Under the pieces are notes generated by a model. It searched no databases. It was not told where the DNA came from and saw only the letters and a list, made by a program, of their open reading frames with translations. The translations under genes and the position numbers were made by a program. Positions 10,957-43,122 of a stretch of DNA of 64,000 nucleotides are shown here, in pieces (the first letter of the stretch is position 1; every line of letters begins with the position of its first letter). Location of the stretch: IMG/VR virus record IMGVR_UViG_3300027996_002186, positions 1-64,000 of that record. One strand, written 5' to 3'.

Positions 10957-10964
10957 TATATTTG
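10957..10964 (+). promoter_or_regulatory. Bacteroidota-type -7 box TATATTTG
   Basis: TAnnTTTG consensus ahead of a structured leader and ORF 11100. Confidence 0.6.
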
Positions 10965-10968
10965 TTAT

Positions 10969-11094
10969 ATGAATTGGTACGACTAATTCACCCTATGTGA
11001 AGGTAGGTAAATTTCAAACATGACTTCTCCTCTCTGTTTGTTTCGCCTAGCTGAGCGAGCTCCACTTTTTTGTAGGAAGCGAATCAGTTTTTTT
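10969..11094 (+). ncRNA. candidate structured leader/ncRNA
   Basis: Serial hairpins (TGAATTGG/CTAATTCA; CAAACA/TGTTTG; TTCGC/GCGAA), locally GC-richer, ends in T-run. Confidence 0.35.
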
Positions 11095-11099
11095 ATTAT

Positions 11100-11366
11100 A
11101 TGATAATATTTAATACCATAAAGAAAGCAGAACATTATGTCTCCTACTGTAACAAGAAGGTTGATCGGGAAGAGGGTGGATATGATTGGTCCTCTGTAAG
11201 AACTTTTATAGAGGGTGAATATATTATATGCAATAGCTCCGGTGATGGTTGTGGTTGTGGGTGTGATGATTATATGTATGATTATAATGAAGTAATTGGT
11301 CGTATAAAATCGTATGATAAAAAAAGTATTCGTGGTAATAAACTAAAACAGATCATCGGTTTTTGA
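11100..11366 (+). CDS. hypothetical protein with C-terminal RxxK(L/I)xxI tag
   Basis: GCGCGC cluster; ends IRGNKLKQIIGF. Confidence 0.7.
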   Translation: MIIFNTIKKAEHYVSYCNKKVDREEGGYDWSSVRTFIEGEYIICNSSGDGCGCGCDDYMYDYNEVIGRIKSYDKKSIRGNKLKQIIGF

Positions 11367-11434
11367 ACAGATTTGAACAGAAAAAAATCTACAATATCTC
11401 AATAAATAAATAATTTATATTAATATATATAAAT

Positions 11435-11944
11435 ATGTTATTAAAGTATAAACTTTTTTTAGAAAAAAAATTCGATTCTAGAAAAGATATTGAGGGTTAT
11501 GTAGATGCCAATGAATTGGTTGGACAAAGACTTTGGTTTCATACCAATAGGACTAATCGTAATAACGGTAATAATGGGATGATTGGTGTTTATAGTACAT
11601 CACCTTCTGGTAGAAAAAAGGGTTTAGCTGGTAGGTATACGAATGAAGTTAGACTAACAGATCCTATTTTCTTTCAGACCTCAATAGCAGGATCTGATAC
11701 TATAAAGGCTACAAAAAAGAGAGGTTTAATAGCAGGAGTTTCGGGTGTAGTTGTTGAAACAAATAATGATATAAATAATATGATTCCGATAACTTACAAC
11801 CCCAACGAAAATGGGTATTTTCATGAGGTGGGAGATGTGGATGCAAAAGAAATAATATCGGGTAGTGAGGTATATTTCAACTCAACAGAAGATGGACAAT
11901 GGTTTATCTATGTGAAAAATCCCGTGTATCAATTACTCAAATAG
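11435..11944 (+). CDS. N-terminal-motif phage protein
   Basis: MLLKYKLFLE; TTAATATATA upstream. Confidence 0.8.
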   Translation: MLLKYKLFLEKKFDSRKDIEGYVDANELVGQRLWFHTNRTNRNNGNNGMIGVYSTSPSGRKKGLAGRYTNEVRLTDPIFFQTSIAGSDTIKATKKRGLIAGVSGVVVETNNDINNMIPITYNPNENGYFHEVGDVDAKEIISGSEVYFNSTEDGQWFIYVKNPVYQLLK

Positions 11945-12149
11945 AAAATAAACCGAGTTCCGATTCAAATATTACTCCAAAAATATATAAGCCAAAAAAT
12001 TGGTCGTTGAGTAGCACTGGATTTATAACAATACCAAATTATTGGATTGAAGGAAGACAACCAGATTTACGTTTAGATATCTACGACATATACTTTCTTA
12101 AAGTGGTAATATTAATTTATGATATGTTTATTTTTAATATATAACTATA

Positions 12150-12704
12150 ATGAAACACCTTATAAGATATAATGAGTCTGATGAGTCTGATGATAATAAA
12201 TTAGATATTAAGTATATAGAATCTTGCTTTGCTGAATTAATAGATAATTATATTGATTATAATAATGGTTATTTAGGAAGAAATAGTTGGACGAAAAATC
12301 CTATTACTAGTAGTTTAGAATATGGTGCTGAGGATTATTACAGTAATGAAAGTTGGTCTATTAGGTTATTACTTGAAGGAACACCAACAAATATGTCTGA
12401 TGATCTATCCGATGGTAGTATAAAAACATCAGGGGTTCATAGATCATCATATAGAATTGGATATAAGTTAGGTAAGTTAGTCAAGGACGCAAATGAAAAA
12501 CTTGAGATATTAAAGGAAATTGAAGTGGGTGTTAAACGAATTAAGGAAAAATACCCATCATATAATATAGATTTCAATAAACAATTTACACATAGTAAGG
12601 ATACACAAACCACGATACAAGAATTTATAGTTGTTGGTATTAGTCAACCACATTCAGATCGTTTACGACAGGTTAAATATAACTGGAAAGACGCGAATAT
12701 TTAA
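12150..12704 (+). CDS. N-terminal-motif protein, paralog family
   Basis: MKHLIRYNES; YIESCFAELIDN. Confidence 0.8.
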   Translation: MKHLIRYNESDESDDNKLDIKYIESCFAELIDNYIDYNNGYLGRNSWTKNPITSSLEYGAEDYYSNESWSIRLLLEGTPTNMSDDLSDGSIKTSGVHRSSYRIGYKLGKLVKDANEKLEILKEIEVGVKRIKEKYPSYNIDFNKQFTHSKDTQTTIQEFIVVGISQPHSDRLRQVKYNWKDANI

Positions 12705-13054
12705 AAGATAATTGTATTAATTTTATATCCTCTTTCAAACATTTTATAAGCTCTCAGAAAATCTTCTTGTTTCGTAAATAAGCTTATTAAATAGTTTTCA
12801 AATTCTACACCAGTGTAACCATCCATGAGCGAGTTTCTAATTCCTCCTACCTTTATAACAATACCTTCATAATCAAAGACAGAATGATCAGTGTCTATAT
12901 CAATACTAAAATTACTCAAAAGGAATCCTATGTGTTTCGCTTTTTCTAAGTATTCTAATCCGATTTTATCATCATAATCACCACACATTATATCATTGAG
13001 GTTTTCACTTAAACCTCCAAAAGTTTTAAATGGTGTTTTATCCAAATGTTTCAT
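12701..13054 (-). CDS. hypothetical protein with C-terminal tag
   Basis: Ends ERGYKINTIIF; TATATTTG box at 13147-13154(-). Confidence 0.7.
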   Translation of the reverse strand: MKHLDKTPFKTFGGLSENLNDIMCGDYDDKIGLEYLEKAKHIGFLLSNFSIDIDTDHSVFDYEGIVIKVGGIRNSLMDGYTGVEFENYLISLFTKQEDFLRAYKMFERGYKINTIIF

Positions 13055-13178
13055 TTAATAAATTTACTGTGTATAATATAATCGACATACACATCAACCA
13101 TATTAAAAACTTGTTAATATTTTCTTTATACTTTTTATACATATCACAAATATAAGGATTATTATTAATATATAACAT

Positions 13179-13610
13179 ATGAAACATCTCAAAAGAATAA
13201 ATGAGTTATATCTAACATCAGATGTGTCTAGTGTTATAGATGATATATTATTGGAGATTAATGATATACCTAAGTTTGTTGGTCTTAATTGGAATCATAC
13301 GGATCGTTTGGGTCGGGCATCTGAACATAGTTTTTTGGTTATTATTAAGTTGAGTGAGGGTATAGAAGATGGTATGGATTATGGTGTTGGTTTAGATGAG
13401 GAAATAACAGAAACTATTAAAAGGTTATTAGAATTTATGACAAGCAATCGATATGAATACTTGATGGAATTTGGAACAGATAACATACCACCTGGTACTT
13501 CAAAAAAAGAATTAAGTGATTATATTAGGAAGTTTGAATATAGTGAATTATCTGATAATGATTTAACTATGTGGGTGGATGAATTTATAAGAATAACTTT
13601 TACAAAATGA
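13179..13610 (+). CDS. N-terminal-motif protein, paralog family
   Basis: MKHLKRINE; VIDDILLEIND...TIKRLLEFM. Confidence 0.8.
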   Translation: MKHLKRINELYLTSDVSSVIDDILLEINDIPKFVGLNWNHTDRLGRASEHSFLVIIKLSEGIEDGMDYGVGLDEEITETIKRLLEFMTSNRYEYLMEFGTDNIPPGTSKKELSDYIRKFEYSELSDNDLTMWVDEFIRITFTK

Positions 13611-14026
13611 GATACATGAAAACATATGAATCATTTGGGAATCCCTTTGGTAACAGTCCGAGGGATAGACGAATCAAGTTGTACAGTTTCCCCAGGGCAA
13701 CACTTTTACTTGAAATCGAGGATATTCTAAGAGAGTTAGAGGATAATAATATACGTGTTGAGGTATATTTTTGGGATGGTGTTGAGGTTTTCTTAACCAG
13801 TAGAAACGAACATGAAGTTAGAAGAGGCTTACTAGCTCCTGATACATTCCCATATGAGGTTATAAAACCTAATATAGAGCATCTAGTTTCTTTCTTAGAA
13901 GAAATTGGATATAAAATTAAAAGTATTCATAATATTGTTAATCTTGAATCAAGAGGATCAATAACTCAATATCCTGATTTGGATGGTGAAGAAATAGGTA
14001 GATTGGAATTTAGATTTATCAAATAA
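13607..14026 (+). CDS. N-terminal-motif protein, paralog family
   Basis: MRYMKTYES; EIEDILRELEDNN...IEHLVSFLEEIGY. Confidence 0.8.
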   Translation: MRYMKTYESFGNPFGNSPRDRRIKLYSFPRATLLLEIEDILRELEDNNIRVEVYFWDGVEVFLTSRNEHEVRRGLLAPDTFPYEVIKPNIEHLVSFLEEIGYKIKSIHNIVNLESRGSITQYPDLDGEEIGRLEFRFIK

Positions 14027-14207
14027 TTAATTACTTTATAAACAATACAACATTTAATTTTTAGTTCCATTTTTCTAATTCATATTCCTTTAAGGTTATC
14101 CAAATACCAAGTATTCTATGTTGTAAAGCTCTAGTAGTAACTAAACAAGTTGCCTTGCGGTTTCGGATAGTAAAAATATTTTTAGTTTTTATTCTATACA
14201 TAGTTAA

Positions 14208-14567
14208 TTATTTTAAAATACTATTGATTTTTTCATCACGAATCTCTAATAGTAGTTGATCTTTATCAAACTCAGGGTAAGCAAATTCACCGACACATAC
14301 TTGTGTGTGTCCATCTTTGACATAGAGTTCCCAAGCATCTCCAATACCTTGTCCAATACCAGATATCTTAAAAATATTATCTGGTTTGGTTTTAGAAAAT
14401 TTAATTATATCTTCTTCGTATGAATACCACTCACACCATGAATCTGCGTCTGAATCACCATATCTATCAAAGGCGTATTTAGCACTATCAGAAAAATTTC
14501 TAAATTTATTAATTAACTTATTACTACCCTCCACAATAGTAAATTGATACTTTGTTAAATATGACAT
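14208..14567 (-). CDS. phage hypothetical protein with C-terminal tag
   Basis: Start MSYLTKY; ends IRDEKINSILK. Confidence 0.75.
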   Translation of the reverse strand: MSYLTKYQFTIVEGSNKLINKFRNFSDSAKYAFDRYGDSDADSWCEWYSYEEDIIKFSKTKPDNIFKISGIGQGIGDAWELYVKDGHTQVCVGEFAYPEFDKDQLLLEIRDEKINSILK

Positions 14568-14624: not shown

Positions 14625-14828
14625 TTAAACTTTATATTTTTCAAGGTAAGTATCAAATGTTTTATCACATAAATCATTTCTAAAACCTTTAATAATAGTC
14701 TTATAGAAATATCCCGTATGTCTTTTAGCATACAAGTCAATAACATTACTAGCGTTACCGCAATCATTCATAGTTTCACAACCAGAAATAATTTCAGTTA
14801 CTTTATCAATTTCAAAATCTGTGTTCAT
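14625..14828 (-). CDS. hypothetical protein
   Basis: ORF downstream of TACATTTG box at 14864-14871(-). Confidence 0.65.
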   Translation of the reverse strand: MNTDFEIDKVTEIISGCETMNDCGNASNVIDLYAKRHTGYFYKTIIKGFRNDLCDKTFDTYLEKYKV

Positions 14829-14909
14829 AGTTTATATTTTTTAATTATTACTTTATTTATATACAAATGTAAGGATATTATCATACTAATACAAATTAAT
14901 ATATACTTT

Positions 14910-17545: not shown

Positions 17546-17734
17546 TTACGAAAGAATACCTTTTCCAAGAATAAGTGGAGAAGCATCTTTGTTTGTTGTT
17601 ATGGTAAAAAGATTTTCATATTCCTTTATGATAAGAGCTTTATCACCGAACATTTTTTTATAGTTCTCTCTAGCATAAGCTTCAACTTCATCTCTTACTG
17701 AATCTTCCATTATAATTTCTTCTTTTCTTTTCAT
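17546..17734 (-). CDS. hypothetical protein
   Basis: 62-aa ORF in - strand gene run. Confidence 0.65.
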   Translation of the reverse strand: MKRKEEIIMEDSVRDEVEAYARENYKKMFGDKALIIKEYENLFTITTNKDASPLILGKGILS

Positions 17735-17783
17735 TTCTTTTCTTTTTATAGGTTTATAATTGAATACAAAAATACAAATCTAT

Positions 17784-18597: not shown

Positions 18598-18831
18598 TTA
18601 ATACCATATTTGAAAATATCTGAAAATATTCCCGGGCTCTTCTTTATCCATTGATAAGTAAATTGGTAGATTTTGGTCATGGTCATTATCCATTATTTGA
18701 ATATCACTATCTGATATATGAAGTATTTCATATTCCTTACCAGGTGTTAAAAGAACAGTCATTGGGTAAATACAAGTTAGTTTTTCACCAACTGATATTT
18801 TTCTACTATTAATTGATATTTTCTTTGACAT
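18598..18831 (-). CDS. hypothetical protein
   Basis: TATCTTTG box (18836-18843) 4 nt upstream of ATG. Confidence 0.7.
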   Translation of the reverse strand: MSKKISINSRKISVGEKLTCIYPMTVLLTPGKEYEILHISDSDIQIMDNDHDQNLPIYLSMDKEEPGNIFRYFQIWY

Positions 18832-18854
18832 ATAACAAAGATAAGGAAAATATA

Positions 18855-22072: not shown

Positions 22073-22327
22073 TCACTTTAATGCTTTATATGACTCGTTA
22101 TACATGAAATGATATAACATGCCTATGATCATGGAAAAGATGCCTATGATTAGTATTGGTGATATAATAACACCAATGCTTTTATATCTAAACATAGATA
22201 AAAGTAATACAAGTCCACCCAAAGATAAAAACAATAATGTTTTTATCTTAATTGATGATAAAAATTTATCTACATCACCACCATAATTGGTATCTACTAT
22301 TTTCTTAACTTCCTTTTCAAATTCCAT
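22073..22327 (-). CDS. two-TM membrane protein
   Basis: Hydrophobic helices. Confidence 0.7.
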   Translation of the reverse strand: MEFEKEVKKIVDTNYGGDVDKFLSSIKIKTLLFLSLGGLVLLLSMFRYKSIGVIISPILIIGIFSMIIGMLYHFMYNESYKALK

Positions 22328-22668
22328 TATTTACTTAATTTATCCTTTAGTTTTATTAATCCAAACATTTGTTCTTCTCCTCGGCCATCGAATTTACGTT
22401 TATTATTTAATATCCATTCTAAATCAACAATTCTTTTATTACAATTCTTTATATAGTAAACACCATACTTAATTCTTGAAGATTTAAGGTTATTCCAATC
22501 AGCAATCATAACTTCGTCTATATCAATATTTTTATTTTTTAGAAGAACCTTCATGAAATTAAACGACCTTATAGTAAGTTGTGTTTTTATATCAACTATA
22601 TTTTTACCTCCTTTGAAGGATTGTATTATGGTTCTATCAACCATCTGTAATATTTTTTCTGGACTCAT
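22327..22668 (-). CDS. hypothetical protein
   Basis: TATATTTG box (22673-22680) 4 nt upstream of ATG. Confidence 0.7.
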   Translation of the reverse strand: MSPEKILQMVDRTIIQSFKGGKNIVDIKTQLTIRSFNFMKVLLKNKNIDIDEVMIADWNNLKSSRIKYGVYYIKNCNKRIVDLEWILNNKRKFDGRGEEQMFGLIKLKDKLSK

Positions 22669-22837
22669 ATTACAAATATAGTAAATTAATTTGAATATAT
22701 AAAGTTTATGTCGGATTTTTTTATGGTACTATCAAATATAAACAAATGATATAAAATAAACAAATGATATATTATTTAATATATAGGTGTGTTAGTTTTG
22801 CTATTTGTGTAATGATATTTAATTTAAAATAAAAGTT

Positions 22838-23100: not shown

Positions 23101-23553
23101 CTATATTAATCTATTATCATTTAGTAAACCAGTACCCAAAGCCGCGGTAGTAGCTAATACATCACATCTTTCATTTTCTTCATGTCCGTTGTGCCCCTTA
23201 ACCCAATTAAAATTTATATTGAAATTGTTGTGTATGTTTAAGTATCTTCTCCAAAGGTCTTCATTTTTCTTACCGCCAAAGTTTTTCTTCTTATCCCAAT
23301 TAAAAACCCATCCTTTGCTAATAGAGTCAACGACATATTTTGAATCAGAATAAACTTCTATTCTATATTTGGTATTTTTAATTGCTTCTAAAGCAACGAT
23401 TATAGCAAGTAACTCCATTCGGTTATTCGTTGTGTGGATATATCCTTGTGATAGTTCTTTGACTTTACCTTTGAACTTCATGACAACTCCATAACCACCC
23501 GGACCAGGGTTACCACGAGAACTACCATCTGTATATATGTAAATTTTATCCAT
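23101..23553 (-). CDS. rnhA: ribonuclease HI
   Basis: YTDGSSRGNPGPGG, TTNNRMEL, SDSKYV, WVKGH.G..ENERCD. Confidence 0.97.
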   Translation of the reverse strand: MDKIYIYTDGSSRGNPGPGGYGVVMKFKGKVKELSQGYIHTTNNRMELLAIIVALEAIKNTKYRIEVYSDSKYVVDSISKGWVFNWDKKKNFGGKKNEDLWRRYLNIHNNFNINFNWVKGHNGHEENERCDVLATTAALGTGLLNDNRLI

Positions 23554-23861
23554 TATATTTTTATGGATTTCCATACCTCCACGGGGTTATTTTTTTGTTC
23601 AACTTTGAAAACACTTTTAAATGGTGTTTTGAAAACTCTAACTGTTATACCTGTTTTTGAATTAGAAAATTCTTTGATTGATTTAAAATCATCTGTTCCA
23701 TAAGAATATAAAGATTTGAATCTCTTGTCGATTTCGCCTTTTTTATTTATGCGATTAATCAAATAACAAAAAGAGTTTGATTCTTTAATTCCTGTATAAA
23801 ACCTAGTCATTACTAATCTACGTTTGGTATCTACTTTTGGGGAAAATTTTTTGTATCTCAT
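23553..23861 (-). CDS. basic hypothetical protein
   Basis: TATCTTTG box (23866-23873) upstream. Confidence 0.7.
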   Translation of the reverse strand: MRYKKFSPKVDTKRRLVMTRFYTGIKESNSFCYLINRINKKGEIDKRFKSLYSYGTDDFKSIKEFSNSKTGITVRVFKTPFKSVFKVEQKNNPVEVWKSIKI

Positions 23862-23889
23862 AATACAAAGATACGGAAAATAATCCGAA

Positions 23890-24615
23890 TTACAAAATCG
23901 ACTTTATCTCATTTACTTTATCCTCACTCAATAACTTAGACATAACTCTCCAAAATATATCATCATTATCAGCCATTGATTCTGATAATCTAAAAATAGG
24001 AATTGGTTTTTCTATATTTTTTAATTCCATCTCAAAGATATAAAACAACATAAATTCTTTAGATATCAAAATAACTTCTGGATTATCAACTAACAATTTA
24101 TCATAATTATCACTTTTCATTATATCAAATGATGCTGGGTAAAAATGTTCGATAAGTCTGTTATATAAATGGAATCCAATAGATGCTTTAGTATCACCAA
24201 ATAATTTAGTATTAGCTTCTATTCTAGATGTTCTATTTATAACAGTCCCAACATAAGTATTTAATAAACCTGTTCCAACTTCCCATATGTTACCGGAGTC
24301 AGATCCTATACCAAATGATGCTTTTACTCCAGTGATACTAACAAAGTCATTACATAATTTATTTAAAGCTCTGTGTGTTGATAATAGATAAGCGTATCCT
24401 TCAATATAATTTTTATCTGATAAAAATATTGTTAATACTCCATCACCGGTTGTACCCATATGTATATCATCGGATATAATATTAGCTATATCTGATTGTA
24501 TTTGATAATAAGACTCGATGAAATTTAAAAATTCATTGGATTGTTTATATTGAAAGTTTTCAAATAACCCACTAAAATTCCTGATATCTGTTAATATTGT
24601 AGTCGCTGATTTCAT
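23890..24615 (-). CDS. class III nucleotidyl (adenylate/guanylate-type) cyclase, stand-alone catalytic domain
   Basis: TDIRNFS, GDGVL, GIGSDSG, YVGTVINRTSRIE motifs. Confidence 0.85.
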   Translation of the reverse strand: MKSATTILTDIRNFSGLFENFQYKQSNEFLNFIESYYQIQSDIANIISDDIHMGTTGDGVLTIFLSDKNYIEGYAYLLSTHRALNKLCNDFVSITGVKASFGIGSDSGNIWEVGTGLLNTYVGTVINRTSRIEANTKLFGDTKASIGFHLYNRLIEHFYPASFDIMKSDNYDKLLVDNPEVILISKEFMLFYIFEMELKNIEKPIPIFRLSESMADNDDIFWRVMSKLLSEDKVNEIKSIL

Positions 24616-24664
24616 AAATACAAAGATAGATAAATTTTATCATATATCAATATATTATAAGTAT

Positions 24665-24934: not shown

Positions 24935-24985
24935 AAGTTATATATTATAATTAATATATAAAGAAATAATAAAAAATATAATTAT

Positions 24986-25372
24986 ATGAAATATTTAAAG
25001 AAATTTTTCGAAGACCTTGAGGAAGCTCAAGAAGAAGTAGTACAGGCACAGAGTGAAGGTGATATGGATGCTTGTATTGAGGCTTGTAATAAATGTGCTG
25101 AGATATGTAAAAGGTGTGCTGATGAGTGTGCTAAGAATGATAATGAAGAGTGTGCTAAGAATTGTACAGAATGTGCTTTATTATGTGAATTATGTGCTAC
25201 AGCTTGTGAGAGTGGATCAACTAGATCTAAAGATATCTGTGAGTTGTGTGTAGATTGTTGTAAAGACTGTGTTGAGTCATGTGATGATTGTGGTTCAGAA
25301 ACTTGTACAGAATGTTCAGCGGCTTGTAATGTTTGTATAGAAGAGTGTATGATGTGTCTTGAGTCCATGTAA
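24986..25372 (+). CDS. Cys-rich four-helix-bundle Cu-storage-like protein (Csp/DUF326) with N-terminal motif
   Basis: Regular CxxxC/CxxC helices (CIEACNKCAEICKRCADEC...); starts MKYLKKFFE. Confidence 0.75.
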   Translation: MKYLKKFFEDLEEAQEEVVQAQSEGDMDACIEACNKCAEICKRCADECAKNDNEECAKNCTECALLCELCATACESGSTRSKDICELCVDCCKDCVESCDDCGSETCTECSAACNVCIEECMMCLESM

Positions 25373-25565: not shown

Positions 25566-26180
25566 TTAATTTTTTATAATCCCTAAATCTTTTAATGCTA
25601 GATAACCAAAGTAAGCTCCGAATAGAGCCATAAATAAGAATCCTGACATAACACTAACGATAATTAATAACACTGATGTTACTAAAGAAACTTTAGCCGC
25701 TATTGAAAATGCTTGTCCTCGGTTGATTCCTAATTTTCTACTTTTTATTGATAATAAATCTCTTAAAATTCTACCACCATCCATTGGATATATTGGGAGA
25801 ATGTTAAATACGAACAGTAATAGGTTAACCATCATAAATGAATCAATGAATGTGTTTGGATAAACAAAACTAATCAACATTCCAATGAAATATAGAGTTA
25901 GATTACTTATTGGACCTGCGGCCGTGATTGGAATAGAATCTCTCTCGTGTATATTAGAATCAATAGAGGCAGATCCACTAAATAAACCAACCTCAATACC
26001 ATATACTCTATAACCCCTTCTGTTAGCTACAAAAGCGTGTGCCATTTCATGCAATATTACTGATATAAAAATTGAAACTGCAATCGGTATTGGTGTTATT
26101 ATAAATATAATCAGGAAGAGTAGGTTCAGATTAACTGGTGTTCCCTGGAATGTAAATAACTTAAATATTAAATTTGTCAT
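25566..26180 (-). CDS. site-2 protease (M50) membrane metalloprotease
   Basis: HEMAH, AAGP, FNILPIYPMDGG. Confidence 0.93.
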   Translation of the reverse strand: MTNLIFKLFTFQGTPVNLNLLFLIIFIITPIPIAVSIFISVILHEMAHAFVANRRGYRVYGIEVGLFSGSASIDSNIHERDSIPITAAGPISNLTLYFIGMLISFVYPNTFIDSFMMVNLLLFVFNILPIYPMDGGRILRDLLSIKSRKLGINRGQAFSIAAKVSLVTSVLLIIVSVMSGFLFMALFGAYFGYLALKDLGIIKN

Positions 26181-26296
26181 AACTAATTTTTCTTTGCTTT
26201 ATATTTCATTTATACAAATATAGTTATATTATATCAAGAACCATAAAAAGTGTTTAATTATTTAATATATAATTGTATAAAAATCACTACAAAAAC

Positions 26297-31159: not shown

Positions 31160-31298
31160 AATTATTTTTTATAAAGATAGGTATGTTATTATTACTAAAG
31201 AAATTTAAAAAGTTTTAATTATTTATACACATATAAAAAATTATACTAATCTATATAATTCATAATATTTGTATATATTTGATATAAATACAATTCAA

Positions 31299-31496
31299 AT
31301 GAATAAATTTAAGAAAGGACAAAGAGTATTTTACCTTTTGATGGGTAGTACTTGTCAATCGAATATTGTGGATTTTTATACTAAAGATGGTATAATCTTT
31401 TACGTTGATGATTTATTTGATAATATTAAAGAATTTTATTTATTCACGAATAGAAAGAGTTGTATAGAATTTCACCAAAATAGTTTTAAAAGTTAA
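31299..31496 (+). CDS. hypothetical protein
   Basis: MNKFKKGQRV; TATATTTG upstream. Confidence 0.6.
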   Translation: MNKFKKGQRVFYLLMGSTCQSNIVDFYTKDGIIFYVDDLFDNIKEFYLFTNRKSCIEFHQNSFKS

Positions 31497-34007: not shown

Positions 34008-34043
34008 AGTGTATATATTATAAAATTTTTATATATTTGTAGG

Positions 34044-34466
34044 ATGAGTAAATTATACGGAGTTGCTTTAATAACCAATTCCAAAATTAGAGATTTGATA
34101 TTGAGTTATGTTTTAGACGAAGAATCATTCAACAAGAATGATTATGTTTATGATGGTGAGTATGATTATATTATTGATATCAATAACACACTCAATACAG
34201 ATATCTCTAGATATACAAAGGTTTATAAAACATTAAATGGGGCTAAAAGACTAAGAGATAGTTTTGGAACAGATTCAGTAATGAGACTAAGGTACGCCAT
34301 ACCAGCAGGTGTTGGTTGGAAACGAGAATATAATACACCGACACATCAAGCTGTTATTATTGATATAACAAAAAAGTGGGATGATATAATCGATAAAAGA
34401 ATTGAAGAACGTACTAAAATCTTTAATAAAGATATAGAGAGGTTAAAATCAAAGAAGTCCAAATAA
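34044..34466 (+). CDS. hypothetical protein
   Basis: TATATTTG (34032-34039) 4 nt upstream of ATG. Confidence 0.75.
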   Translation: MSKLYGVALITNSKIRDLILSYVLDEESFNKNDYVYDGEYDYIIDINNTLNTDISRYTKVYKTLNGAKRLRDSFGTDSVMRLRYAIPAGVGWKREYNTPTHQAVIIDITKKWDDIIDKRIEERTKIFNKDIERLKSKKSK

Positions 34467-35927: not shown

Positions 35928-35956
35928 AAAAACCCACCGTTACAGCGGTGGGTTTT
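35928..35956. terminator. intrinsic terminator
   Basis: AAAACCCACCG-TTACAG-CGGTGGGTTTT. Confidence 0.85.
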
Positions 35957-36114
35957 ATTAACTCCTCGTTACAAGTATTAACTATTTTCTTACACCTGAG
36001 AACTTGCTAAACCTGGACTCACGGATTCACTTTTCAAGTAGAAAAGCTAACATCGTGTTAGAGAAGGAAATGAATTAAAGTTGTTTAATTCTGAATGTCT
36101 TTCTTTTTATTTAT
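35928..36114 (-). ncRNA. candidate ~185-nt ncRNA
   Basis: TATATTTG box (36119-36126), ORF-free hairpin series, then terminator. Confidence 0.5.
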
Positions 36115-36204
36115 ATTACAAATATAGTGAAAAGTTTTTAATAAAAAATAAAATTTTACATTTTTAATATATAATACTCATATTAGTTAAAATAAAAACA
36201 ATAA

Positions 36205-37386: not shown

Positions 37387-37472
37387 ATTTCTTAATTTAG
37401 TTATTAATCATATAAAGAATAATCAAAAAAGTTTAATTGTTATTTAATTACTTTATCCTTATATTTGTGATT

Positions 37473-37781
37473 GTGAAAAAGAGTTTAATACTTAAAGGTA
37501 AGAGTGAAATCGATAATTTGTTTACAACTGGGTATCCAGTTTCAAGTGATTTTGTATTTGCTAAAGTTTTATCTTCTGATTCAACTAAATTCCTATTCGC
37601 TGTTTCATCTAAGAAATTTAGAAGAGCAGTTGATAGAAATAGAATAAAAAGGTTGATGAGAGAAGTTACTCGTAAAATAGATATAAGTGGTGTTAAAATT
37701 GCTTTTATCTACACCGGAAAATATTTACCGACATACTCAGAAGTAGAATTATCCATCAAATCAATAATCGGTAAAATATGA
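37473..37781 (+). CDS. rnpA: ribonuclease P protein component
   Basis: LK.K.EI..LF..G; FAVSSKKFRRAVDRNRIKRLMRE (RNR motif); GTG start 5 nt after TATATTTG (37460-37467). Confidence 0.9.
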   Translation: MKKSLILKGKSEIDNLFTTGYPVSSDFVFAKVLSSDSTKFLFAVSSKKFRRAVDRNRIKRLMREVTRKIDISGVKIAFIYTGKYLPTYSEVELSIKSIIGKI

Positions 37782-38631: not shown

Positions 38632-40113
38632 TTATTGACAATCATAACAAGGTCGTTCACCTCTCCCACTACAATCAGAACATTCTATGGTTGAATTACC
38701 ATCACATTCAGTACAATCTACTTTACCCCTAGCATCACAATCCTCACAATCTACATCATGTTCTTCACCATCAGATCCTTCTTCTGTTATAGTTCCTCCA
38801 CCATCACAATTTGAACAATTTTCTGTACCATATCCGTCACATTCTGGACAGTCTCTTTCACCACTACCACCACAATCATAACATTCCACTTCGCCTCCAC
38901 CACCACATCCCTCACATCTATAATGTGAGCCTTCAGTATCTTCTAATATATAACAATTACCACATTCATCTATTGATAGTGTACCATTATCTTTATTCCA
39001 ATATTTCAAAGTGTCTAAGTAAGGATATTTTTCATATTCACCTGGTTTTATATCCACGATTATGTTCAAATTTGTATCATCACCATTAGGATCAATACAA
39101 CTACCATTGGCGTTGGATGCGTTTCCACGTTTTGTATACCAACCATTCTCTTTAGCATAATCCTTAAATAATTGAACATCAGAATCATTGGCTGTGTATA
39201 TTCTATCCATAAATCTTTTACCATCTCTCAATTTCCAAAGTAATGCTCTTCCTAAAATTTTATCTGTATCATCATCTGATTTATAAATAACCAAAGTACA
39301 AACTTCTGGATTAGAAATATAGATATCAAAAAATTCCTCATCAACAGCGGACATACAAGAACTACCTAATACGCCCCTCCTTGTCGAGTAATGTGAATAG
39401 TGATACCAATATCCTATTTTATCACCAGTAACTTCTTCAAATAGTGAAAATTTATCATTAAATTTATCAATTGTTGCTTTATATAAATTAACAAATACTT
39501 CAATATCCTTATCAAGGAATTCTATATCATTAGTTTTAAGTAATGCTCTAATAGCTCTACCTACTTTAACTTCTTGTCTATTCGTTGACCAAATTTTATC
39601 CAATCTATCATCAACCTTTCTAATCTTTTCGGCATTTATGACCAATTCTGTACTTGGGAATTTAACATAAACAAATCTCTTACCCGATTCTTCCGAAACT
39701 GTTTCTTTAATAATTTCTCCTAGTTCATCATTTTCTGGTTTTATCAATTCCTCACCAGGTGTGAATCCTAAAGCATCGAAAATAGTTTTATTTTTATATT
39801 CTCCTCCTTCATTTTTATTAAAAGTTAACCAACCACCATTATTACCAACAAATCTAACCTTAATATTTTCCTCACTCAGTATTTGTTGTGCTCTTCTATC
39901 TGGTATAAATGATACTTTATCATTTTTATCCATTACTATATCAAAATAATTAGACCTAACGTCTAAATCTTTATTCTCAACATCTAAAAGTGATTTGGAT
40001 ACTGGGTTCTCTATTTTTGAAAGAGTGAGTCTAAATTTATCAGAATAAACGACATCCGACTCCAATATTAACTCTAATGACTCATTTATGAAATCAAAAT
40101 ACTTTTTTAACAT
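38632..40113 (-). CDS. N-terminal-motif protein with 8 DnaJ-type CxxCxGxG repeats
   Basis: MLKKYFDFINESLELILES; LGSSCM..GRALLW..FMDRIYT core; paralog of 27949..29415. Confidence 0.85.
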   Translation of the reverse strand: MLKKYFDFINESLELILESDVVYSDKFRLTLSKIENPVSKSLLDVENKDLDVRSNYFDIVMDKNDKVSFIPDRRAQQILSEENIKVRFVGNNGGWLTFNKNEGGEYKNKTIFDALGFTPGEELIKPENDELGEIIKETVSEESGKRFVYVKFPSTELVINAEKIRKVDDRLDKIWSTNRQEVKVGRAIRALLKTNDIEFLDKDIEVFVNLYKATIDKFNDKFSLFEEVTGDKIGYWYHYSHYSTRRGVLGSSCMSAVDEEFFDIYISNPEVCTLVIYKSDDDTDKILGRALLWKLRDGKRFMDRIYTANDSDVQLFKDYAKENGWYTKRGNASNANGSCIDPNGDDTNLNIIVDIKPGEYEKYPYLDTLKYWNKDNGTLSIDECGNCYILEDTEGSHYRCEGCGGGGEVECYDCGGSGERDCPECDGYGTENCSNCDGGGTITEEGSDGEEHDVDCEDCDARGKVDCTECDGNSTIECSDCSGRGERPCYDCQ

Positions 40114-40151
40114 AATTATATTTCAGTTTTTATATATATTAAATACTATTT

Positions 40152-40433
40152 ATGAAATATATTAAACCATATAAAATTTTTGAATCAAGATACACTCTTG
40201 AGGAATACTTATATGCTGTTTCACAAGAATTTAGTAAGTATAATATCTCTGCGGTCGGTGTTCGAGAGTTGTTAGATAATTATAAAGTAGCTATCGAAGA
40301 TGCTATATCAAGTGATGTTGATCCATATACATTTGTAAAAAATATTGCTAATGATATGCAATTATCTGATAATGGTGGTTTCATGAGTCATGACACACCG
40401 CCTCCGCAACCAACAACGATTAAATATCTATAA
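40152..40433 (+). CDS. N-terminal-motif protein
   Basis: MKYIKPYKIFES. Confidence 0.8.
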   Translation: MKYIKPYKIFESRYTLEEYLYAVSQEFSKYNISAVGVRELLDNYKVAIEDAISSDVDPYTFVKNIANDMQLSDNGGFMSHDTPPPQPTTIKYL

Positions 40434-40526
40434 TCTATATCTTTTTTCTCATTATATAGGAAAACATAAACTTGAGCAGATTATTGAATTGAAAAGTTAA
40501 TATATACAGAAAGTATTAATTTTATT

Positions 40527-40907
40527 ATGAGAATAAAGAGATTCAATGAAATAGAAAAATCAGGAGAAATATCTGAAGGTATAGATGCTGATATCTTAGG
40601 TATCACAACTAACACTGGTAGAAGAACCGGAACTAGAAGTCCTAATAGAAGAACTCAATACTTTTATGATTACTATACTGGTAAGAAAATTAGTGGTAAA
40701 TCTAAATATGAATTAAACTCTAAAGTTTTTGACTTGGCTAAGAGAGATGATGAACTTGGTTTATTAGCTCAATTTTGTTTACAAGTTGAAAGAGATTCAA
40801 TGACTACTGATTATAGTATTACAGGACAAATGGATAAAGGTGGTTTGTCTGATGAATTTATACAAAAGATTAAAAATATCAGTGATAATATTGAAGGTGA
40901 AGAGTAA
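40527..40907 (+). CDS. N-terminal-motif protein
   Basis: MRIKRFNE...EISEG; TTAATATATA upstream. Confidence 0.8.
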   Translation: MRIKRFNEIEKSGEISEGIDADILGITTNTGRRTGTRSPNRRTQYFYDYYTGKKISGKSKYELNSKVFDLAKRDDELGLLAQFCLQVERDSMTTDYSITGQMDKGGLSDEFIQKIKNISDNIEGEE

Positions 40908-40918
40908 ATAAACTTGTT

Positions 40919-41140
40919 TCAATTTAATCTAACTATAACACACCCATAATTTGTAGGGTGATCAATAACATTAAAATTATAATCATAACAAGTTTCTTTA
41001 ACGATTTCTTTCATACGATTACTAATACCCGTTATAATTTCAATCTCAATCTCATTTTTTTGCATCATTTCCCAAAAGAAGGTATCTAACCTCCTTGACA
41101 CAAACTCATGTTTAATTCCATGTAAATCTAACTTTTTCAT
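40919..41140 (-). CDS. small Smr/MutS2-domain protein
   Basis: KLDLHG...IITG...NYG.VIV. Confidence 0.75.
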   Translation of the reverse strand: MKKLDLHGIKHEFVSRRLDTFFWEMMQKNEIEIEIITGISNRMKEIVKETCYDYNFNVIDHPTNYGCVIVRLN

Positions 41141-41157
41141 TTTAATATATATCTTAT

Positions 41158-41412
41158 ATGAGATATCTGAGAACATACAAAAAGTTTACGGAAAATGCTT
41201 ACGTAGCAGCATCCACTGCTGGTTCTGGTAGTGTAGTTGCTGCTCAACCTGGATCCTTACCTGGTACATTCGGAACAGATGGGTCTGGTGATATTGGGTT
41301 TACCTTTAAGAAGGAGAAAAGAAAAAAAGGTGATGTTACCGAGGTTAGTGATTTGAGAGACCTAGAAGAGGTTGAAATTGAGAAGGTTGATGATATAAAA
41401 ATCAAAAATTAA
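41158..41412 (+). CDS. N-terminal-motif protein
   Basis: MRYLRTYKKFTEN; TTAATATATA at 41142-41151. Confidence 0.8.
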   Translation: MRYLRTYKKFTENAYVAASTAGSGSVVAAQPGSLPGTFGTDGSGDIGFTFKKEKRKKGDVTEVSDLRDLEEVEIEKVDDIKIKN

Positions 41413-41427
41413 TAAGTTATTTAAAAT

Positions 41428-41696
41428 AAAAAAGAAACTGATTTACATCTGTGTGATCAGATATAATTTCAGTCTCTTTTCTTACGAGTCCAGAAGTTCA
41501 CAATTTCATTTACTCTACTACACACCTTTTAATTCAACCGTATCGGTATAGCTAATACTAATCTACTGCGGATTAAACAGATAAAGAATCCATAACCTCG
41601 GTAAAAGTTATCCCAATTTTCATCACAAGTTACCGCGAGTGATTTATATGAGAGTGATTAAACACTTTTTTAATTTCGGTATAAATTAAATACCTT
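41428..41696 (-). ncRNA. candidate ~265-nt structured ncRNA
   Basis: TATATTTG box (41701-41708); ORF-free; potential kissing loops; long terminal hairpin plus U-run. Confidence 0.5.
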
Positions 41697-41709
41697 AATA
41701 CAAATATAG

Positions 41710-41985
41710 TTATTTTATTTTAATATTTGATCTTTTTTTATTATTATATTTCTGAGCTTTCTCCTTGATATCGGTCAGAGACATACCAAATATTAATGCG
41801 ATTATTATTATAACTACTGACAATAAAGCAGTTGATATGATAATCAAAAATGGTATCCATAATGGAGATGTTACCCACCACCAAGACCAAGTTGCGACCA
41901 TACCTACTTCAGCTAATTTTAATCCCAAAAATAGGAGGAAAATTAACACAGGTAAACTCAAACCACTGTTATTAGATTTTGACAT
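41710..41985 (-). CDS. membrane protein (WSWWWVxxPLW family)
   Basis: LKL.....WSWWWVTSPLWIP motif. Confidence 0.8.
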   Translation of the reverse strand: MSKSNNSGLSLPVLIFLLFLGLKLAEVGMVATWSWWWVTSPLWIPFLIIISTALLSVVIIIIALIFGMSLTDIKEKAQKYNNKKRSNIKIK

Positions 41986-42057
41986 ACAATCTTTTTTATT
42001 TTATACCTATTTCTTATAATAAGTTTTCTATTTTTTTTTGTGAATATATGAGATTGA

Positions 42058-42252
42058 TTATGTAACTGAGACTTTTCTTATTTCAATGTATTCACTTTCA
42101 TATCCATCATATAAGTCTTTCCTATCCAAAGTCCAACGGCTCACACCCAATTGCTCATTACCATAATGAGCGTATAATTTTCCGAGGTTAACAAACACCT
42201 CTACTCTGTTCGTCAATTTCCAACGAATATAAATTATAGTTTGACTTCTCAT
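42058..42252 (-). CDS. hypothetical protein
   Basis: 64-aa ORF. Confidence 0.6.
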   Translation of the reverse strand: MRSQTIIYIRWKLTNRVEVFVNLGKLYAHYGNEQLGVSRWTLDRKDLYDGYESEYIEIRKVSVT

Positions 42253-42276
42253 ATATATTATAAAAAGAAGAGAGAA

Positions 42277-43056
42277 TTATACTCTCTCTTCCCAAAGTTC
42301 ACCAATATTAAGTAATCGATGTTGTATACCATACATATTTATAGTAGCACTTCTGTGGAAGTGACCATAATAGTGGTGTGTGATATCATTACCATTTAAT
42401 CTCAATAAATGAAACATATCTGTTATTTGATTTCGTTCAAATAACAGATCGGTTTTTAATTCTGTATCACCAGTATCTCTAATTATACCTTCAACAAAAG
42501 GACCAAGTCCAATGCTATTATCAACAGGACAATAATCGGGTGAGTTATGTGTAACTACAATATCGATGTCTTTCATGTTAGCTATTTTATCACGATCTAA
42601 TACGAATACTTCATCTTTCCACCAACTTTGACCTGGGTGTATTGTATAGTCACCTTTTCTTTGTTTATCAGTTCTTCTCCAATTTCTATCAACACTCACA
42701 GCACCACCAACACAAAGTATATTTTTTGTTTCGGTAAATCCTAATGTATCTAATTCTAAATTAAGGATGGTGTAGTCTGGAATAAGTTTAATATTACTAA
42801 ATCCAAATGGGTCATTATCGAAATAAGGTTTGAAGTCATGATTACCACGAATTGCGTATAACATGATGTTATTCTTCTCAAGAATAGTATTTACATATCC
42901 TAATGTTCGGCGCTCTTTCTCAAGAGTAGCAAAACCAACACCAAAGTCACCAACTTGAATTATGATAGCATCTTTTATATCATACTGCTTAACATATTGA
43001 TTAATCAAGTTAAAATTTCCGTGGATATCACCGAGATATAAAATTCTTTTTTTCAT
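42277..43056 (-). CDS. calcineurin-like metallophosphoesterase
   Basis: GDIHG, GDFG, RGNHD, VTHNSP, YGHFH; TATATTTG at 43061-43068. Confidence 0.93.
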   Translation of the reverse strand: MKKRILYLGDIHGNFNLINQYVKQYDIKDAIIIQVGDFGVGFATLEKERRTLGYVNTILEKNNIMLYAIRGNHDFKPYFDNDPFGFSNIKLIPDYTILNLELDTLGFTETKNILCVGGAVSVDRNWRRTDKQRKGDYTIHPGQSWWKDEVFVLDRDKIANMKDIDIVVTHNSPDYCPVDNSIGLGPFVEGIIRDTGDTELKTDLLFERNQITDMFHLLRLNGNDITHHYYGHFHRSATINMYGIQHRLLNIGELWEERV

Positions 43057-43122
43057 ATTACAAATATAAGTAAAATTTACAGAAGGCAAAAATTATTTAT
43101 AGTATATCATGATGTTACATGA

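What the first reader, a model, noticed from the sequence alone, without database searches (positions are those of the whole stretch)
10957..43068. Bacteroidota-type TAnnTTTG promoters and near-leaderless gene architecture
Seen: TATATTTG/TATCTTTG/TACATTTG at 10957+, 13147-, 14864-, 18836-, 22673-, 23866-, 24621-, 26215-, 34032+, 36119-, 37460+, 41701-, 43061-. In seven cases the start codon is only 4-5 nt downstream. The late motif is likewise often 2-6 nt from the ATG, and no SD sequences are evident. Known: TAnnTTTG is the -7 element of the Bacteroidota primary sigma factor. Inference: the host is Bacteroidota, these are early genes, and many phage mRNAs are leaderless or almost so.
Basis: partly seen in the sequence, partly recalled or inferred. 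Interest (0 to 1): 0.6.

Follow-up and report, generated by a model that had tools for sequence, protein, structure and literature searches.

The report
Megaphage promoters placed for leaderless mRNAs
A 483-kb uncultured phage carries two kinds of promoter, one of the type only Bacteroidota read and one of its own. About 40% of them sit so close to the start codon that the mRNA should begin at the AUG itself, which is rare in that host phylum and unreported for giant phages; no RNA data could be obtained.

Summary
All 13 sites exist. Seven precede an ATG-ORF of 33-259 aa by 4-5 nt. TAHHTTTG-N4-ATG occurs 8 times in the window against 1.45 expected (0 of 100 shuffles), although TAnnTTTG as a bare word is not enriched.

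The window is the first 64 kb of a 483,262-bp phage with the standard code, kin of the >630-kb phage LR745206. Genome-wide there are two promoter classes.
- E class (~49 genes): TTTG at exactly -33/-32 plus (cc)TATATTTGT, the Bacteroidota sigma-A type.
- L class (~210 genes): TTAATATATA with no -35 element, probably read by a phage sigma (a T4 gp55-like protein and two ECF-like sigmas are encoded).

Both classes show the same two-state spacing to the ATG: 4-6 nt, or 15-35 nt, almost never 8-14. In Flavobacterium the -7 box ends at -5, so a 4-nt spacing puts +1 on the A of AUG. About 110 of 617 genes (42% of motif-bearing genes) are therefore predicted to be leaderless.

Shine-Dalgarno cores are depleted (3.1%). 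Relatives keep the architecture; Bacteroides phages B40-8 and crAss001 do not. A Bacteroidota host is supported by four indirect lines. "Early" is an inference, and the "late" motif also drives RNR, a Lon-like protease and a tRNA.

The parts
10957..10964 (+). E-class -7 box TATATTTG. An ATG lies 4 nt downstream but opens only 5 codons. About 125 nt then run to a U-run near 11095: a possible small RNA or a long leader for the gene at 11100.
   Evidence: fold z = -1.5, not significant
13147..13154 (-). E-class -7 box, 4 nt before the ATG of a 33-aa hydrophobic peptide ORF (13142 down to 13040). That ORF overlaps the start of gene 12701-13054(-).
14864..14871 (-). E-class -7 box TACATTTG with a TTTG about 20 nt upstream. 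It is 35 nt before the ATG of 14625-14828(-): the leadered state.
17767..17782 (-). Two overlapping -7-like boxes (TAGATTTG, TATTTTTG), 32 and 40 nt before the ATG of 17546-17734(-).
18836..18843 (-). E-class -7 box TATCTTTG, 4 nt before the ATG of 18598-18831(-), 77 aa: predicted leaderless.
22673..22680 (-). E-class -7 box, 4 nt before the ATG of 22327-22668(-), 113 aa: predicted leaderless. A second box at 22733-22740(-), with a TTTG about 20 nt upstream, lies 60 nt further up.
23866..23873 (-). E-class -7 box TATCTTTG with a TTTG 19 nt upstream, 4 nt before the ATG of 23553-23861(-), 102 aa: predicted leaderless.
24621..24628 (-). E-class -7 box, 5 nt before the ATG of 23890-24615(-), 241 aa: predicted leaderless.
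26215..26222 (-). E-class -7 box, 5 nt before an 8-codon mini-ORF and 34 nt before the ATG of 25566-26180(-), 204 aa.
31274..31281 (+). E-class -7 box, 17 nt before the ATG of 31299-31496(+).
34032..34039 (+). E-class -7 box, 4 nt before the ATG of 34044-34466(+), 140 aa: predicted leaderless. It shares a divergent intergenic region with the L motif at 34012-34018(-).
36119..36126 (-). E-class -7 box with no ORF downstream. It precedes an ORF-free stretch of about 185 nt (about 36114 down to 35929) that ends in a strong GC hairpin plus U-run: a candidate small RNA.
   Evidence: z = -4.08, 0 of 200 shuffles; no phage-database match
37460..37467 (+). E-class -7 box, 5 nt before a GTG that opens 102 codons (37473-37781).
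41425..41708 (-). E-class -7 box (41701-41708) followed by a conserved ORF-free RNA candidate of about 270 nt, ending in a long terminator hairpin at about 41428.
   Evidence: Fold z = -2.97. 78% identity over 98% of its length in LR745206 and 73.6% in LR756502. The box is invariant, the upstream DNA is not conserved, and 13 of 55 predicted pairs show compensatory changes. No Rfam match.
43061..43068 (-). E-class -7 box with a TTTG 18 nt upstream, 4 nt before the ATG of the metallophosphoesterase gene 42277-43056(-): predicted leaderless.
   Evidence: The Pfam Metallophos match starts at residue 4. Orthologues keep the box at 4-5 nt or at 16-30 nt.
13168..13174 (+). Example of the L-class motif (TTAATATATA core), 4 nt before the ATG of 13179-13610(+), divergent from the E promoter at 13147(-). 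Other L sites in the window at 3-7 nt from the ATG, given by motif start: 3062+, 4621+, 9540-, 10826-, 11425+, 12137+, 19294-, 20023-, 20032+, 21259+, 24939-, 27892-, 27937+, 29953+, 31496+, 34012-, 41145+, 46522-, 52550-, 61728-.
24954..24960 (+). Example of the L-class motif in the leadered state, 25 nt before the ATG of 24986-25372(+). Others, by motif start: 26265+, 36167+, 37854+, 40131-, 40500+, 47459-, 50688-, 53160+, 58295-.

Best explanation
The phage uses host RNA polymerase with two promoter classes.

Class E is a bona fide Bacteroidota primary-sigma promoter: TTTG at -33, then (cc)TATATTTGT as the -7 box. Host holoenzyme can read it without any phage factor. It heads about 49 genes (small ORFans, DNA ligases, nucleases, phosphoesterases, ClpP, GluRS, an operon with an ECF-like phage sigma) and at least two small RNAs.

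Class L is TTAATATATA, a -10-only element. It heads about 210 genes, including the virion genes. It is probably read by a phage-encoded sigma, the T4 gp55-like protein being the best candidate.

In both classes the box is placed in one of two discrete ways.
- Its last base lies 4-6 nt before the ATG. Transcription, which in Flavobacterium starts 4-5 nt after the -7 box, then begins on the A of AUG and gives a leaderless mRNA. Such an mRNA would be translated by direct ribosome binding to the 5'-terminal AUG.
- It lies 15-35 nt upstream, giving an A-rich leader of about 11-30 nt without a Shine-Dalgarno sequence, as in Bacteroidota hosts.
Leaders of about 3-10 nt are avoided.

Shown here: the motifs, their position-exact -33 element, their restriction to heads of transcription units, the bimodal spacing, its conservation in relatives, and the SD depletion.

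Inferred: the actual start sites, which sigma reads L, the temporal order, and the mode of translation.
For: Spacing:
- TAnnTTTG to the first ATG of called genes is 4 nt in 9 genes and 5 nt in 5, then a second class at 15-35 nt.
- ATATATA to the ATG is 4, 5 and 6 nt in 50, 28 and 15 genes, then a hump at 19-25 nt.
- A count free of gene calls gives 50, 32 and 20 at 4-6 nt, against 0-3 at each of 0-3 nt and 7-15 nt. ATG outnumbers GTG 102 to 4.

Location and orientation:
- TAATATATA occurs 164 times, 143 of them intergenic, where intergenic DNA is 7.7% of the genome. Its reverse complement shows no link to gene starts.

The -33 element:
- TTTG/TTGG has its G at -33/-32 in 16 of 42 E sites, against 0 of 42 and 2 of 42 in flanking control windows and 7 of 211 in L sites.

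Promoter rather than ribosome-binding site:
- 136 of 182 divergent-head genes carry an exact motif, against 23 of 240 co-directional genes with a gap under 25 nt.
- Orphan E boxes head ORF-free, terminator-ended RNAs, and one is conserved with covariation.

Start-site geometry:
- The -7 box lies at -12..-5 with 4-5 nt to the start site in F. johnsoniae (PMC6847099) and F. psychrophilum (PMC9723704).
- In leadered promoters A peaks at the 5th-7th nt after the box.

The start codon is real:
- The Metallophos domain starts at residue 4.
- LigA and its 73%-identical orthologue align from the first Met, and both have the box at 4 nt.

Conservation:
- Ten orthologous loci have the box at 4, 4, 4, 4, 5 or 16, 17, 20, 26, 30 nt.
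- The same bimodality is seen in nine related contigs and in LR745206.

Sigmas and polymerases:
- ECF-like sigma of 202 aa (Pfam 60 bits; nearest solved structure SigW) inside an E-headed operon.
- A gp55-family hit, phrog_234, E = 1.9e-7.
- No RNAP beta, beta' or T7-type hit.
- E. coli-type promoters are not enriched.
Against: - There is no RNA evidence at all; every start site is inferred from geometry measured in Flavobacterium, not in the unknown host.
- Efficient leaderless translation has not been shown in Bacteroidota, where only about 4-6% of mRNAs are leaderless.
- Only 38% of E sites have the -33 element.
- The gp55-like assignment rests on one profile hit. Pfam region 2 scores only 17 bits, and no solved structure matched by sequence.
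- One structural gene's orthologues have the L motif lost, or at about 12-14 nt, so the two-state rule is not absolute.
- Divergent phage RNA polymerases would escape Pfam.
- My gene calls are home-made (first ATG plus a codon-bias score).
Confidence: 0.7

Rival explanations
1. The boxes next to the ATG are translation signals (AU-rich ribosome-docking or Kozak-like elements, perhaps for S1 or phage bS21-modified ribosomes), not promoters. The mRNAs would then be leadered and start further upstream.
For: Bacteroidota rely on A-rich upstream context rather than SD (PMC6847099). The phage encodes bS21 and S1-domain proteins. The upstream region is A-rich in all genes.
Against: - The motifs are nearly absent before operon-internal genes (10%) but present at 75% of divergent heads.
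- One and the same motif sits at two discrete distances, which a ribosome-binding site would not do.
- E boxes come with a -33 TTTG at an exact distance.
- E boxes also precede ORF-free, terminated RNAs.
Confidence: 0.06
2. The boxes are promoters, but the start site lies further downstream (E. coli-like 6-8 nt after the element). Transcripts would start inside the annotated ORF, translation would begin at a later in-frame ATG, and there would be no leaderless mRNAs.
For: The offset was never measured for this host or for the L motif. T4 late promoters have 5 nt, not 4, between the box and +1 (PMC1524935).
Against: - The ATG itself is what is positioned: a sharp peak at 4-6 nt, with ATG outnumbering GTG 102 to 4.
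- The conserved N-termini and the catalytic motif of the metallophosphoesterase begin right at that ATG.
- Bacteroidota offsets of 4-5 nt are documented in two species.
Confidence: 0.08
3. E-class promoters do not mark an early temporal class. They are host-type promoters that travelled with genes captured from Bacteroidota, or that are simply constitutive, and the timing is set otherwise.
For: Several E genes are host-like: GluRS, ClpP, CoaE, NAD-ligase, M28 peptidase. E sites are scattered over the whole genome, 9 of 49 lying in the first 40 kb. L also drives RNR, a Lon-like protease and a tRNA.
Against: Many E genes are phage ORFans in the window with no family hit. None of about 25 annotated E genes is structural. 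A phage sigma lies in an E operon, as expected for a cascade. GluRS is only 40-46% identical to bacterial ones, so it is not a recent capture.
Confidence: 0.25
4. The host is not Bacteroidota. The TAnnTTTG-like box would be read by a phage sigma in another AT-rich host, and the resemblance would be chance.
For: There is no CRISPR spacer or prophage link. The host of the related marine megaphage Mar_Mega_1 is unresolved (PMC9723777). The word TAnnTTTG is not enriched overall.
Against: The -33 TTTG at the exact canonical position; SD depletion; all top GluRS hits are Bacteroidota; LR745206 was predicted to replicate in Bacteroidetes (PMC7162821); no enrichment of TTGACA/TATAAT promoters.
Confidence: 0.08

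Closest known systems
Bacteroidota primary-sigma (sigma-ABfr) promoters: -33 TTTG / -7 TAnnTTTG (B. fragilis, B. thetaiotaomicron, Flavobacterium)
   Same: Same -7 word, with no G at the two free positions (34 of 42 are TATATTTG). Same -33 TTTG at the same distance. Leadered members give leaders in the host's usual range (modal 23 nt in B. thetaiotaomicron).
   Different: About 35-40% of the phage's E promoters are set so that +1 falls on the AUG. In hosts only about 3.7% (B. thetaiotaomicron, 5' UTR under 10 nt) to 5.5% (F. psychrophilum) of mRNAs are leaderless. The phage consensus is tighter, with a C-rich stretch before the box and a T after it.
Leaderless-rich genomes recognised by a -10 box at fixed distance from the start codon (Deinococcus deserti, mycobacteria; method of Zheng et al. 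2011 and GeneMarkS-2)
   Same: A promoter box a fixed few nt upstream of an AUG, no SD, and strong ATG preference. The inference made here is the one used in those studies (PMC4007540, PMC4633059, PMC3160421, PMC6028130).
   Different: Here it is a phage, in a phylum not known for leaderless translation. There are two different promoter types sharing one geometry, and a clear forbidden zone between the two states.
T4 late promoters (TATAAATA at -13..-6, read by gp55 with gp33 and gp45)
   Same: The L motif is a short AT-rich -10-only box without a -35 element. A gp55-family protein is encoded. Virion genes carry the motif.
   Different: The word differs (TTAATATATA). It also precedes RNR, a Lon-like protease and tRNA-Met. 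T4 late mRNAs are leadered and use SD. gp33 and gp45 partners were not sought.
Jumbo phages with mapped transcriptomes (phiKZ, AR9)
   Same: A giant phage with its own AT-rich promoter classes.
   Different: phiKZ showed no leaderless transcript, and AR9 5' UTRs are 26-491 nt. Those phages bring their own multisubunit RNA polymerases; none was detected here.
Cultured Bacteroides phages B40-8 and crAss001
   Same: TAHHTTTG boxes 20-38 nt before ATGs (the leadered state).
   Different: No peak at 4-5 nt in either genome.

Membership tests
Bacteroidota sigma-A (-33/-7) promoter | -7 box TAnnTTTG (TAHHTTTG) at the head of transcription units, in the sense orientation | tested here: met
   49 genes have the box within 80 nt upstream. 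TAT[ACT]TTTGT occurs 124 times, 58 of them intergenic, where intergenic DNA is 7.7% of the genome. The two free positions are G-free in the selected sites.
Bacteroidota sigma-A (-33/-7) promoter | -33 element TTTG about 19-21 nt upstream of the -7 box | tested here: met
   The G of TTTG/TTGG falls at -33/-32 in 16 of 42 E sites, against 0 of 42 and 2 of 42 in control windows and 7 of 211 in L sites. It is present in a minority only, as in Flavobacterium, where it is weak.
Bacteroidota sigma-A (-33/-7) promoter | Transcription starts 4-5 nt after the final G | not testable with these tools
Indirect evidence only: A peaks at the 5th nt after the box in leadered sites, and AAGG sits at that place in three aligned phages.
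Bacteroidota sigma-A (-33/-7) promoter | Recognition by host sigma-ABfr holoenzyme | not testable with these tools
   This needs in vitro transcription or a reporter in a Bacteroidota strain.
Leaderless mRNA genes | 5' end of the mRNA at, or within about 3 nt of, the start codon | not testable with these tools
   Predicted from box position only.
Leaderless mRNA genes | Promoter -10-type box at a fixed short distance upstream of the start codon | tested here: met
   Sharp peaks at 4-6 nt for both motifs. Window shuffles: 8 against 1.45 and 11 against 1.44.
Leaderless mRNA genes | AUG start strongly preferred; no SD | tested here: met
   102 ATG against 4 GTG at 4-6 nt after the L motif. SD cores in 3.1% of genes.
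T4-type late transcription (gp55 system) | Short AT-rich -10-only promoter without a -35 element | tested here: met
   The logo reads tTAATATATAa, and no upstream position exceeds 0.25 bit.
T4-type late transcription (gp55 system) | Phage-encoded gp55-family sigma | tested here: inconclusive
   G000 126163-126528 (121 aa) matches phrog_234 'late sigma transcription factor', E = 1.9e-7. Pfam region 2 scores only 17 bits. No solved structure matched by sequence.
T4-type late transcription (gp55 system) | The motif is confined to late (virion and lysis) genes | tested here: not met
   The motif also heads the RNR large subunit, a Lon-like protease and tRNA-Met.
T4-type late transcription (gp55 system) | gp33 co-activator and sliding-clamp dependence | not tested
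   Not searched.

The most novel reading that the evidence does not exclude
This megaphage clade (this phage, LR745206, LR756502 and many IMG/VR fragments) has made leaderless initiation a programmed part of its gene expression. Each transcription unit is set to one of two states, 5'-AUG or an A-rich leader of 11 nt or more, with intermediate leaders selected against. The phage's own ribosomal protein bS21 and S1-domain proteins would tune host ribosomes towards these mRNAs, giving the phage a translational channel that host mRNAs hardly use.
Probability: 0.15. Interest if true: 0.8.

Novelty: new variant of a known kind. Interest (0 to 1): 0.6.

Why it matters
- It gives a sequence-only host call for a clade of the largest known phages, one of whose members (Mar_Mega_1) has no assigned host.
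- It gives a first transcription map of such a phage: host-sigma units, phage-sigma units and small RNAs.
- It predicts that about one gene in six, and about 40% of promoter-proximal genes, is translated from a leaderless mRNA in a phylum where this is rare. That makes leaderless initiation in Bacteroidota directly testable with short reporter constructs.
- It is practical for annotation. The two boxes fix true start codons and reveal very small ORFs and non-coding RNAs that gene callers miss.

Tried and rejected
I did not look for another route.
- Other genetic codes: reading TAG, TGA or TAA through does not lengthen ORFs meaningfully. The phage therefore uses the standard code and is not a Lak phage, which was my first guess.
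- Phage RNA polymerase: no Pfam beta, beta' or T7-type hit and no large protein with a DFDGD-type motif. A divergent enzyme is not excluded.
- A third, ECF-type promoter class (AAC...CGT) was sought and not found. K-mer enrichment in the 115 motif-less upstream regions gave only A-rich words.
- Initiation factors IF1 and IF3: none found.
- Rfam: no family in the window at gathering score, and none at E <= 1 around the conserved RNA.
- The RNA after 10957 does not fold better than shuffles (z = -1.5). The RNA after 36119 has no match in the phage collection.
- The recurring word AATCACTAC near predicted start sites is too rare (9 copies) to interpret.
- Leaderless and leadered L genes do not differ significantly in length (P = 0.075).
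- E. coli-type promoters: 141 against 148 +/- 11, not enriched.
- CRISPR spacer search: not attempted.

Full report
WHAT THE WINDOW IS

The window is bases 1-64000 of a 483,262-bp virus record, estimated 98% complete. GC content is about 29%. Reading any stop codon through gives no real gain in ORF length, so the standard code applies. That excludes my first guess of a Lak phage.

The only DNA relative among deposited phages is LR745206, 634,780 bp. [quoted passage not shown] For the related marine Mar_Mega_1 no host could be assigned (PMC9723777).

I called 619 genes with a simple codon-bias and first-ATG scheme, covering 92% of the genome. Wherever possible I repeated the key counts without gene calls.

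THE OBSERVATION

All 13 sites exist.

- As a bare word TAnnTTTG is not enriched: 113 against 99.5 +/- 9.9.
- What is far from chance is its position. TAHHTTTG-N4-ATG occurs 8 times in the window against 1.45 +/- 1.27, with none of 100 shuffles reaching 8.
- Seven sites lie 4-5 nt before an ATG that opens a real ORF of 33 to 259 aa: 13147, 18836, 22673, 23866, 24621, 34032 and 43061.
- 37460 lies 5 nt before a GTG ORF.
- 10957 and 26215 lie before 5- and 8-codon mini-ORFs.
- 14864 is 35 nt from its ATG.
- 36119 and 41701 have no ORF downstream.

TWO PROMOTER CLASSES, GENOME-WIDE

Class E has the consensus aTTTGG-N19-(tcc)TATATTTGTa.
- An unselected feature clinches its identity. The G of a TTTG/TTGG lies at exactly -33 or -32 in 16 of 42 E sites. 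The figures are 0 of 42 and 2 of 42 in flanking control windows, and 7 of 211 in the other class. This is the -33/-7 promoter of the Bacteroidota primary sigma (PMC6847099, PMC7366714).

Class L is tTAATATATAa with no upstream element.
- TAATATATA occurs 164 times, and 143 copies are intergenic although only 7.7% of the genome is intergenic.
- 59 copies lie 3-7 nt and 62 lie 15-35 nt before a called ATG; only 2 lie at 8-14 nt.
- The reverse complement shows no such link.

E. coli-type promoters are not enriched.

PROMOTERS, NOT RIBOSOME SITES

- An exact E or L motif lies within 80 nt of 136 of 182 genes whose upstream neighbour is on the other strand. The figure is 23 of 240 for co-directional genes with a gap under 25 nt.
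- The two E boxes without an ORF are each followed by a structured, ORF-free stretch ending in a hairpin plus U-run (z = -4.08 and -2.97).
- The stretch after 41701 is 78% and 74% identical in LR745206 and LR756502, phages that otherwise share little DNA with this one.
- In the three-way alignment the -7 box is invariant, the DNA upstream of it is not conserved, conservation resumes right after it, and 13 of 55 predicted pairs change compensatorily. That is the signature of a promoter, a transcript and a terminator.

THE TWO-STATE SPACING AND WHY IT MEANS LEADERLESS

- From the G of TAnnTTTG to the first ATG the distance is 4 nt in 9 genes, 5 in 5, 3 in 1 and 6 in 1, then a broad class at 15-35 nt.
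- From the last A of ATATATA the distance is 4, 5 and 6 nt in 50, 28 and 15 genes, then a hump at 19-25 nt.
- Without gene calls (any ATG opening at least 60 codons) the L counts are 50, 32 and 20 at 4-6 nt. They are 0, 0, 0, 3 at 0-3 nt and 3, 3, 3, 1, 0, 1, 1, 1, 0 at 7-15 nt. GTG appears only 4 times at 4-5 nt.
[quoted passage not shown] In F. psychrophilum the box is at -12..-5.
- A 4-nt spacing therefore puts +1 on the A of ATG: truly leaderless, not merely a short leader.
- In the leadered promoters A is enriched at the 5th nt (E) or the 5th-7th nt (L) after the box. Those are the positions the A of the ATG occupies in the other state.

In all, about 110 of 617 genes (18%), or 42% of the 260 motif-bearing genes, are in the leaderless state, and 8 are in the gap at 8-14 nt.

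Hosts of this phylum have about 3.7% (5' UTR under 10 nt) to 5.5% leaderless mRNAs. The mapped jumbo phages phiKZ and AR9 have none.

THE ATG IS THE TRUE START

- The metallophosphoesterase (42277-43056) matches Pfam from residue 4, and its GDxHG motif follows at once.
- NAD-ligase (G000 269782) heads a divergent unit. Its 73%-identical orthologue aligns from the first Met and also has TATATTTG-N4-ATG, although the DNA upstream has diverged.

CONSERVATION

- Orthologues of the phosphoesterase in ten related contigs (58-65% identity, plus one identical copy) all keep a TAnnTTTG box. The spacings are 4, 4, 4, 4, 5 or 16, 17, 20, 26, 30 nt, never between.
- Nine related contigs and a 46-kb sample of LR745206 show both motifs with the same bimodality.
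- One exception: orthologues of a virion gene have lost the L motif, or carry it at about 12-14 nt.
- Bacteroides phages B40-8 and crAss001 show only the leadered state, so the trait is not general to phages of the phylum.

WHO READS WHAT

- No RNA polymerase subunit was detectable.
- The phage encodes an ECF-like sigma of 202 aa (Pfam region 2 at 60 bits and region 4; nearest solved structure SigW). It also encodes a weaker second one of 199 aa, and a 121-aa region-2-only protein that matches the PHROG family of T4 gp55 'late sigma transcription factor' at E = 1.9e-7.
- The strong sigma lies in an operon headed by NAD-ligase behind a leaderless E promoter. This fits a cascade from host sigma to phage sigma to L promoters.
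- T4 late promoters are likewise -10-only (TATAAATA at -13..-6; PMC1524935).
- Which phage sigma reads L remains an inference.

WHAT THE CLASSES DRIVE

- E genes with a family hit: two DNA-ligase types, GluRS, ClpP, CoaE, an HD protein, a PD-(D/E)XK nuclease, two metallophosphoesterases, an M28 peptidase and a DUF2201 metallopeptidase. None is structural. The small E genes in the window have no family.
- L genes include a virion structural protein, a tail fibre, the tail sheath, the large terminase and the head protease. They also include the RNR large subunit and a Lon-like protease, and tRNA-Met.
- L is therefore the phage's general own promoter rather than a purely late one, and 'E = early' is reasonable but untested.

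HOST

Four indirect lines point to Bacteroidota:
- the -33/-7 promoter type;
- SD cores in only 3.1% of genes, below control windows, with 53-65% A upstream;
- the first ~58 of 80 bacterial GluRS relatives are all Bacteroidota, with Cytophagales on top at 40-46% identity and other phyla at 36% or less;
- kinship with LR745206.
No spacer or linkage evidence was obtained.

LIMITS

- No start site was mapped.
- No alternative code was applied to any protein.
- A literature search found no paper combining 'leaderless' with huge phages or megaphages, and none on TAnnTTTG promoters in such phages. This covers open-access texts only.

VERDICT

- the Bacteroidota host is likely;
- the leaderless architecture is strongly predicted, exact rather than approximate, and shared by both promoter classes;
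- the temporal labels are inferred.
This is a new variant of known kinds (sigma-ABfr promoters, leaderless mRNAs, gp55-type promoters) rather than a new kind of system.

Noticed in passing
window 41425-41708 (-): A conserved, ORF-free RNA candidate of about 270 nt behind an E promoter, ending in a long terminator hairpin. It is 78% identical in LR745206 and 74% in LR756502, with compensatory changes in 13 of 55 predicted pairs. No Rfam family matches; the function is unknown.
   Followed up: partly
window 35929-36126 (-): A second orphan E promoter, followed by a structured ORF-free stretch of about 185 nt (z = -4.08) and a strong GC hairpin terminator. There is no match in the phage collection.
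   Followed up: partly
window 10969-10986 (+) and 26183-26209 (-): Mini-ORFs of 5 and 8 codons sitting exactly at the predicted leaderless position of E promoters, ahead of longer untranslated stretches or the real gene. They could be regulatory leader peptides, or could occur by chance.
   Followed up: no
window 13040-13142 (-): An unannotatable 33-aa ORF with a hydrophobic core, at the leaderless position of the E promoter at 13147. Its end overlaps the start of gene 12701-13054, which suggests translational coupling.
   Followed up: no
G000 237927-238121 (+); 260118-261221 (-); about 133.3 kb (-): The phage encodes ribosomal protein bS21 (Pfam 45.6 bits) and S1-domain proteins, one with two S1 domains. 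It has no IF1 or IF3. This may bear on translation of SD-less and leaderless mRNAs.
   Followed up: partly
G000 272913-273521, 471487-472086, 126163-126528 (all +): Three sigma-like genes: a clear ECF-like sigma inside an E-headed operon, a weaker ECF-like one behind an L promoter, and a 121-aa gp55-family candidate. No ECF-type (AAC...CGT) promoter class was found for them.
   Followed up: partly
G000 113141, 171340, 403218 and 345433 upstream regions: Heads of transcription units that lack the exact box often carry a one-base-shorter variant (CCTTATATTGTA, TCGTATATTGTAG). It recalls the TAnnTTGY motif SM5 described in F. psychrophilum (PMC9723704).
   Followed up: no
G000 291055 (tRNA-Met), 213719 (tRNA-Cys), 480858c (tRNA-Gln): Only three tRNAs in 483 kb. 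tRNA-Met has two L motifs immediately upstream, and tRNA-Gln has a degenerate E-like box (CCGTATCTTTAT).
   Followed up: no
L009/L022/L136 and L133 (IMG/VR contigs of metagenome 3300025770): Two other IMG/VR records, of 241,918 and 312,709 bp from one metagenome, hold stretches identical to this genome. The same phage is therefore filed several times as fragments.
   Followed up: no
G000, e.g. 191924 (-), 26283 (+), 403673 (+); also L131: The word AATCACTAC(A)AAA recurs a few nt after promoter boxes in several 5' leaders, here and in LR745206. There are too few copies (9) to judge.
   Followed up: partly
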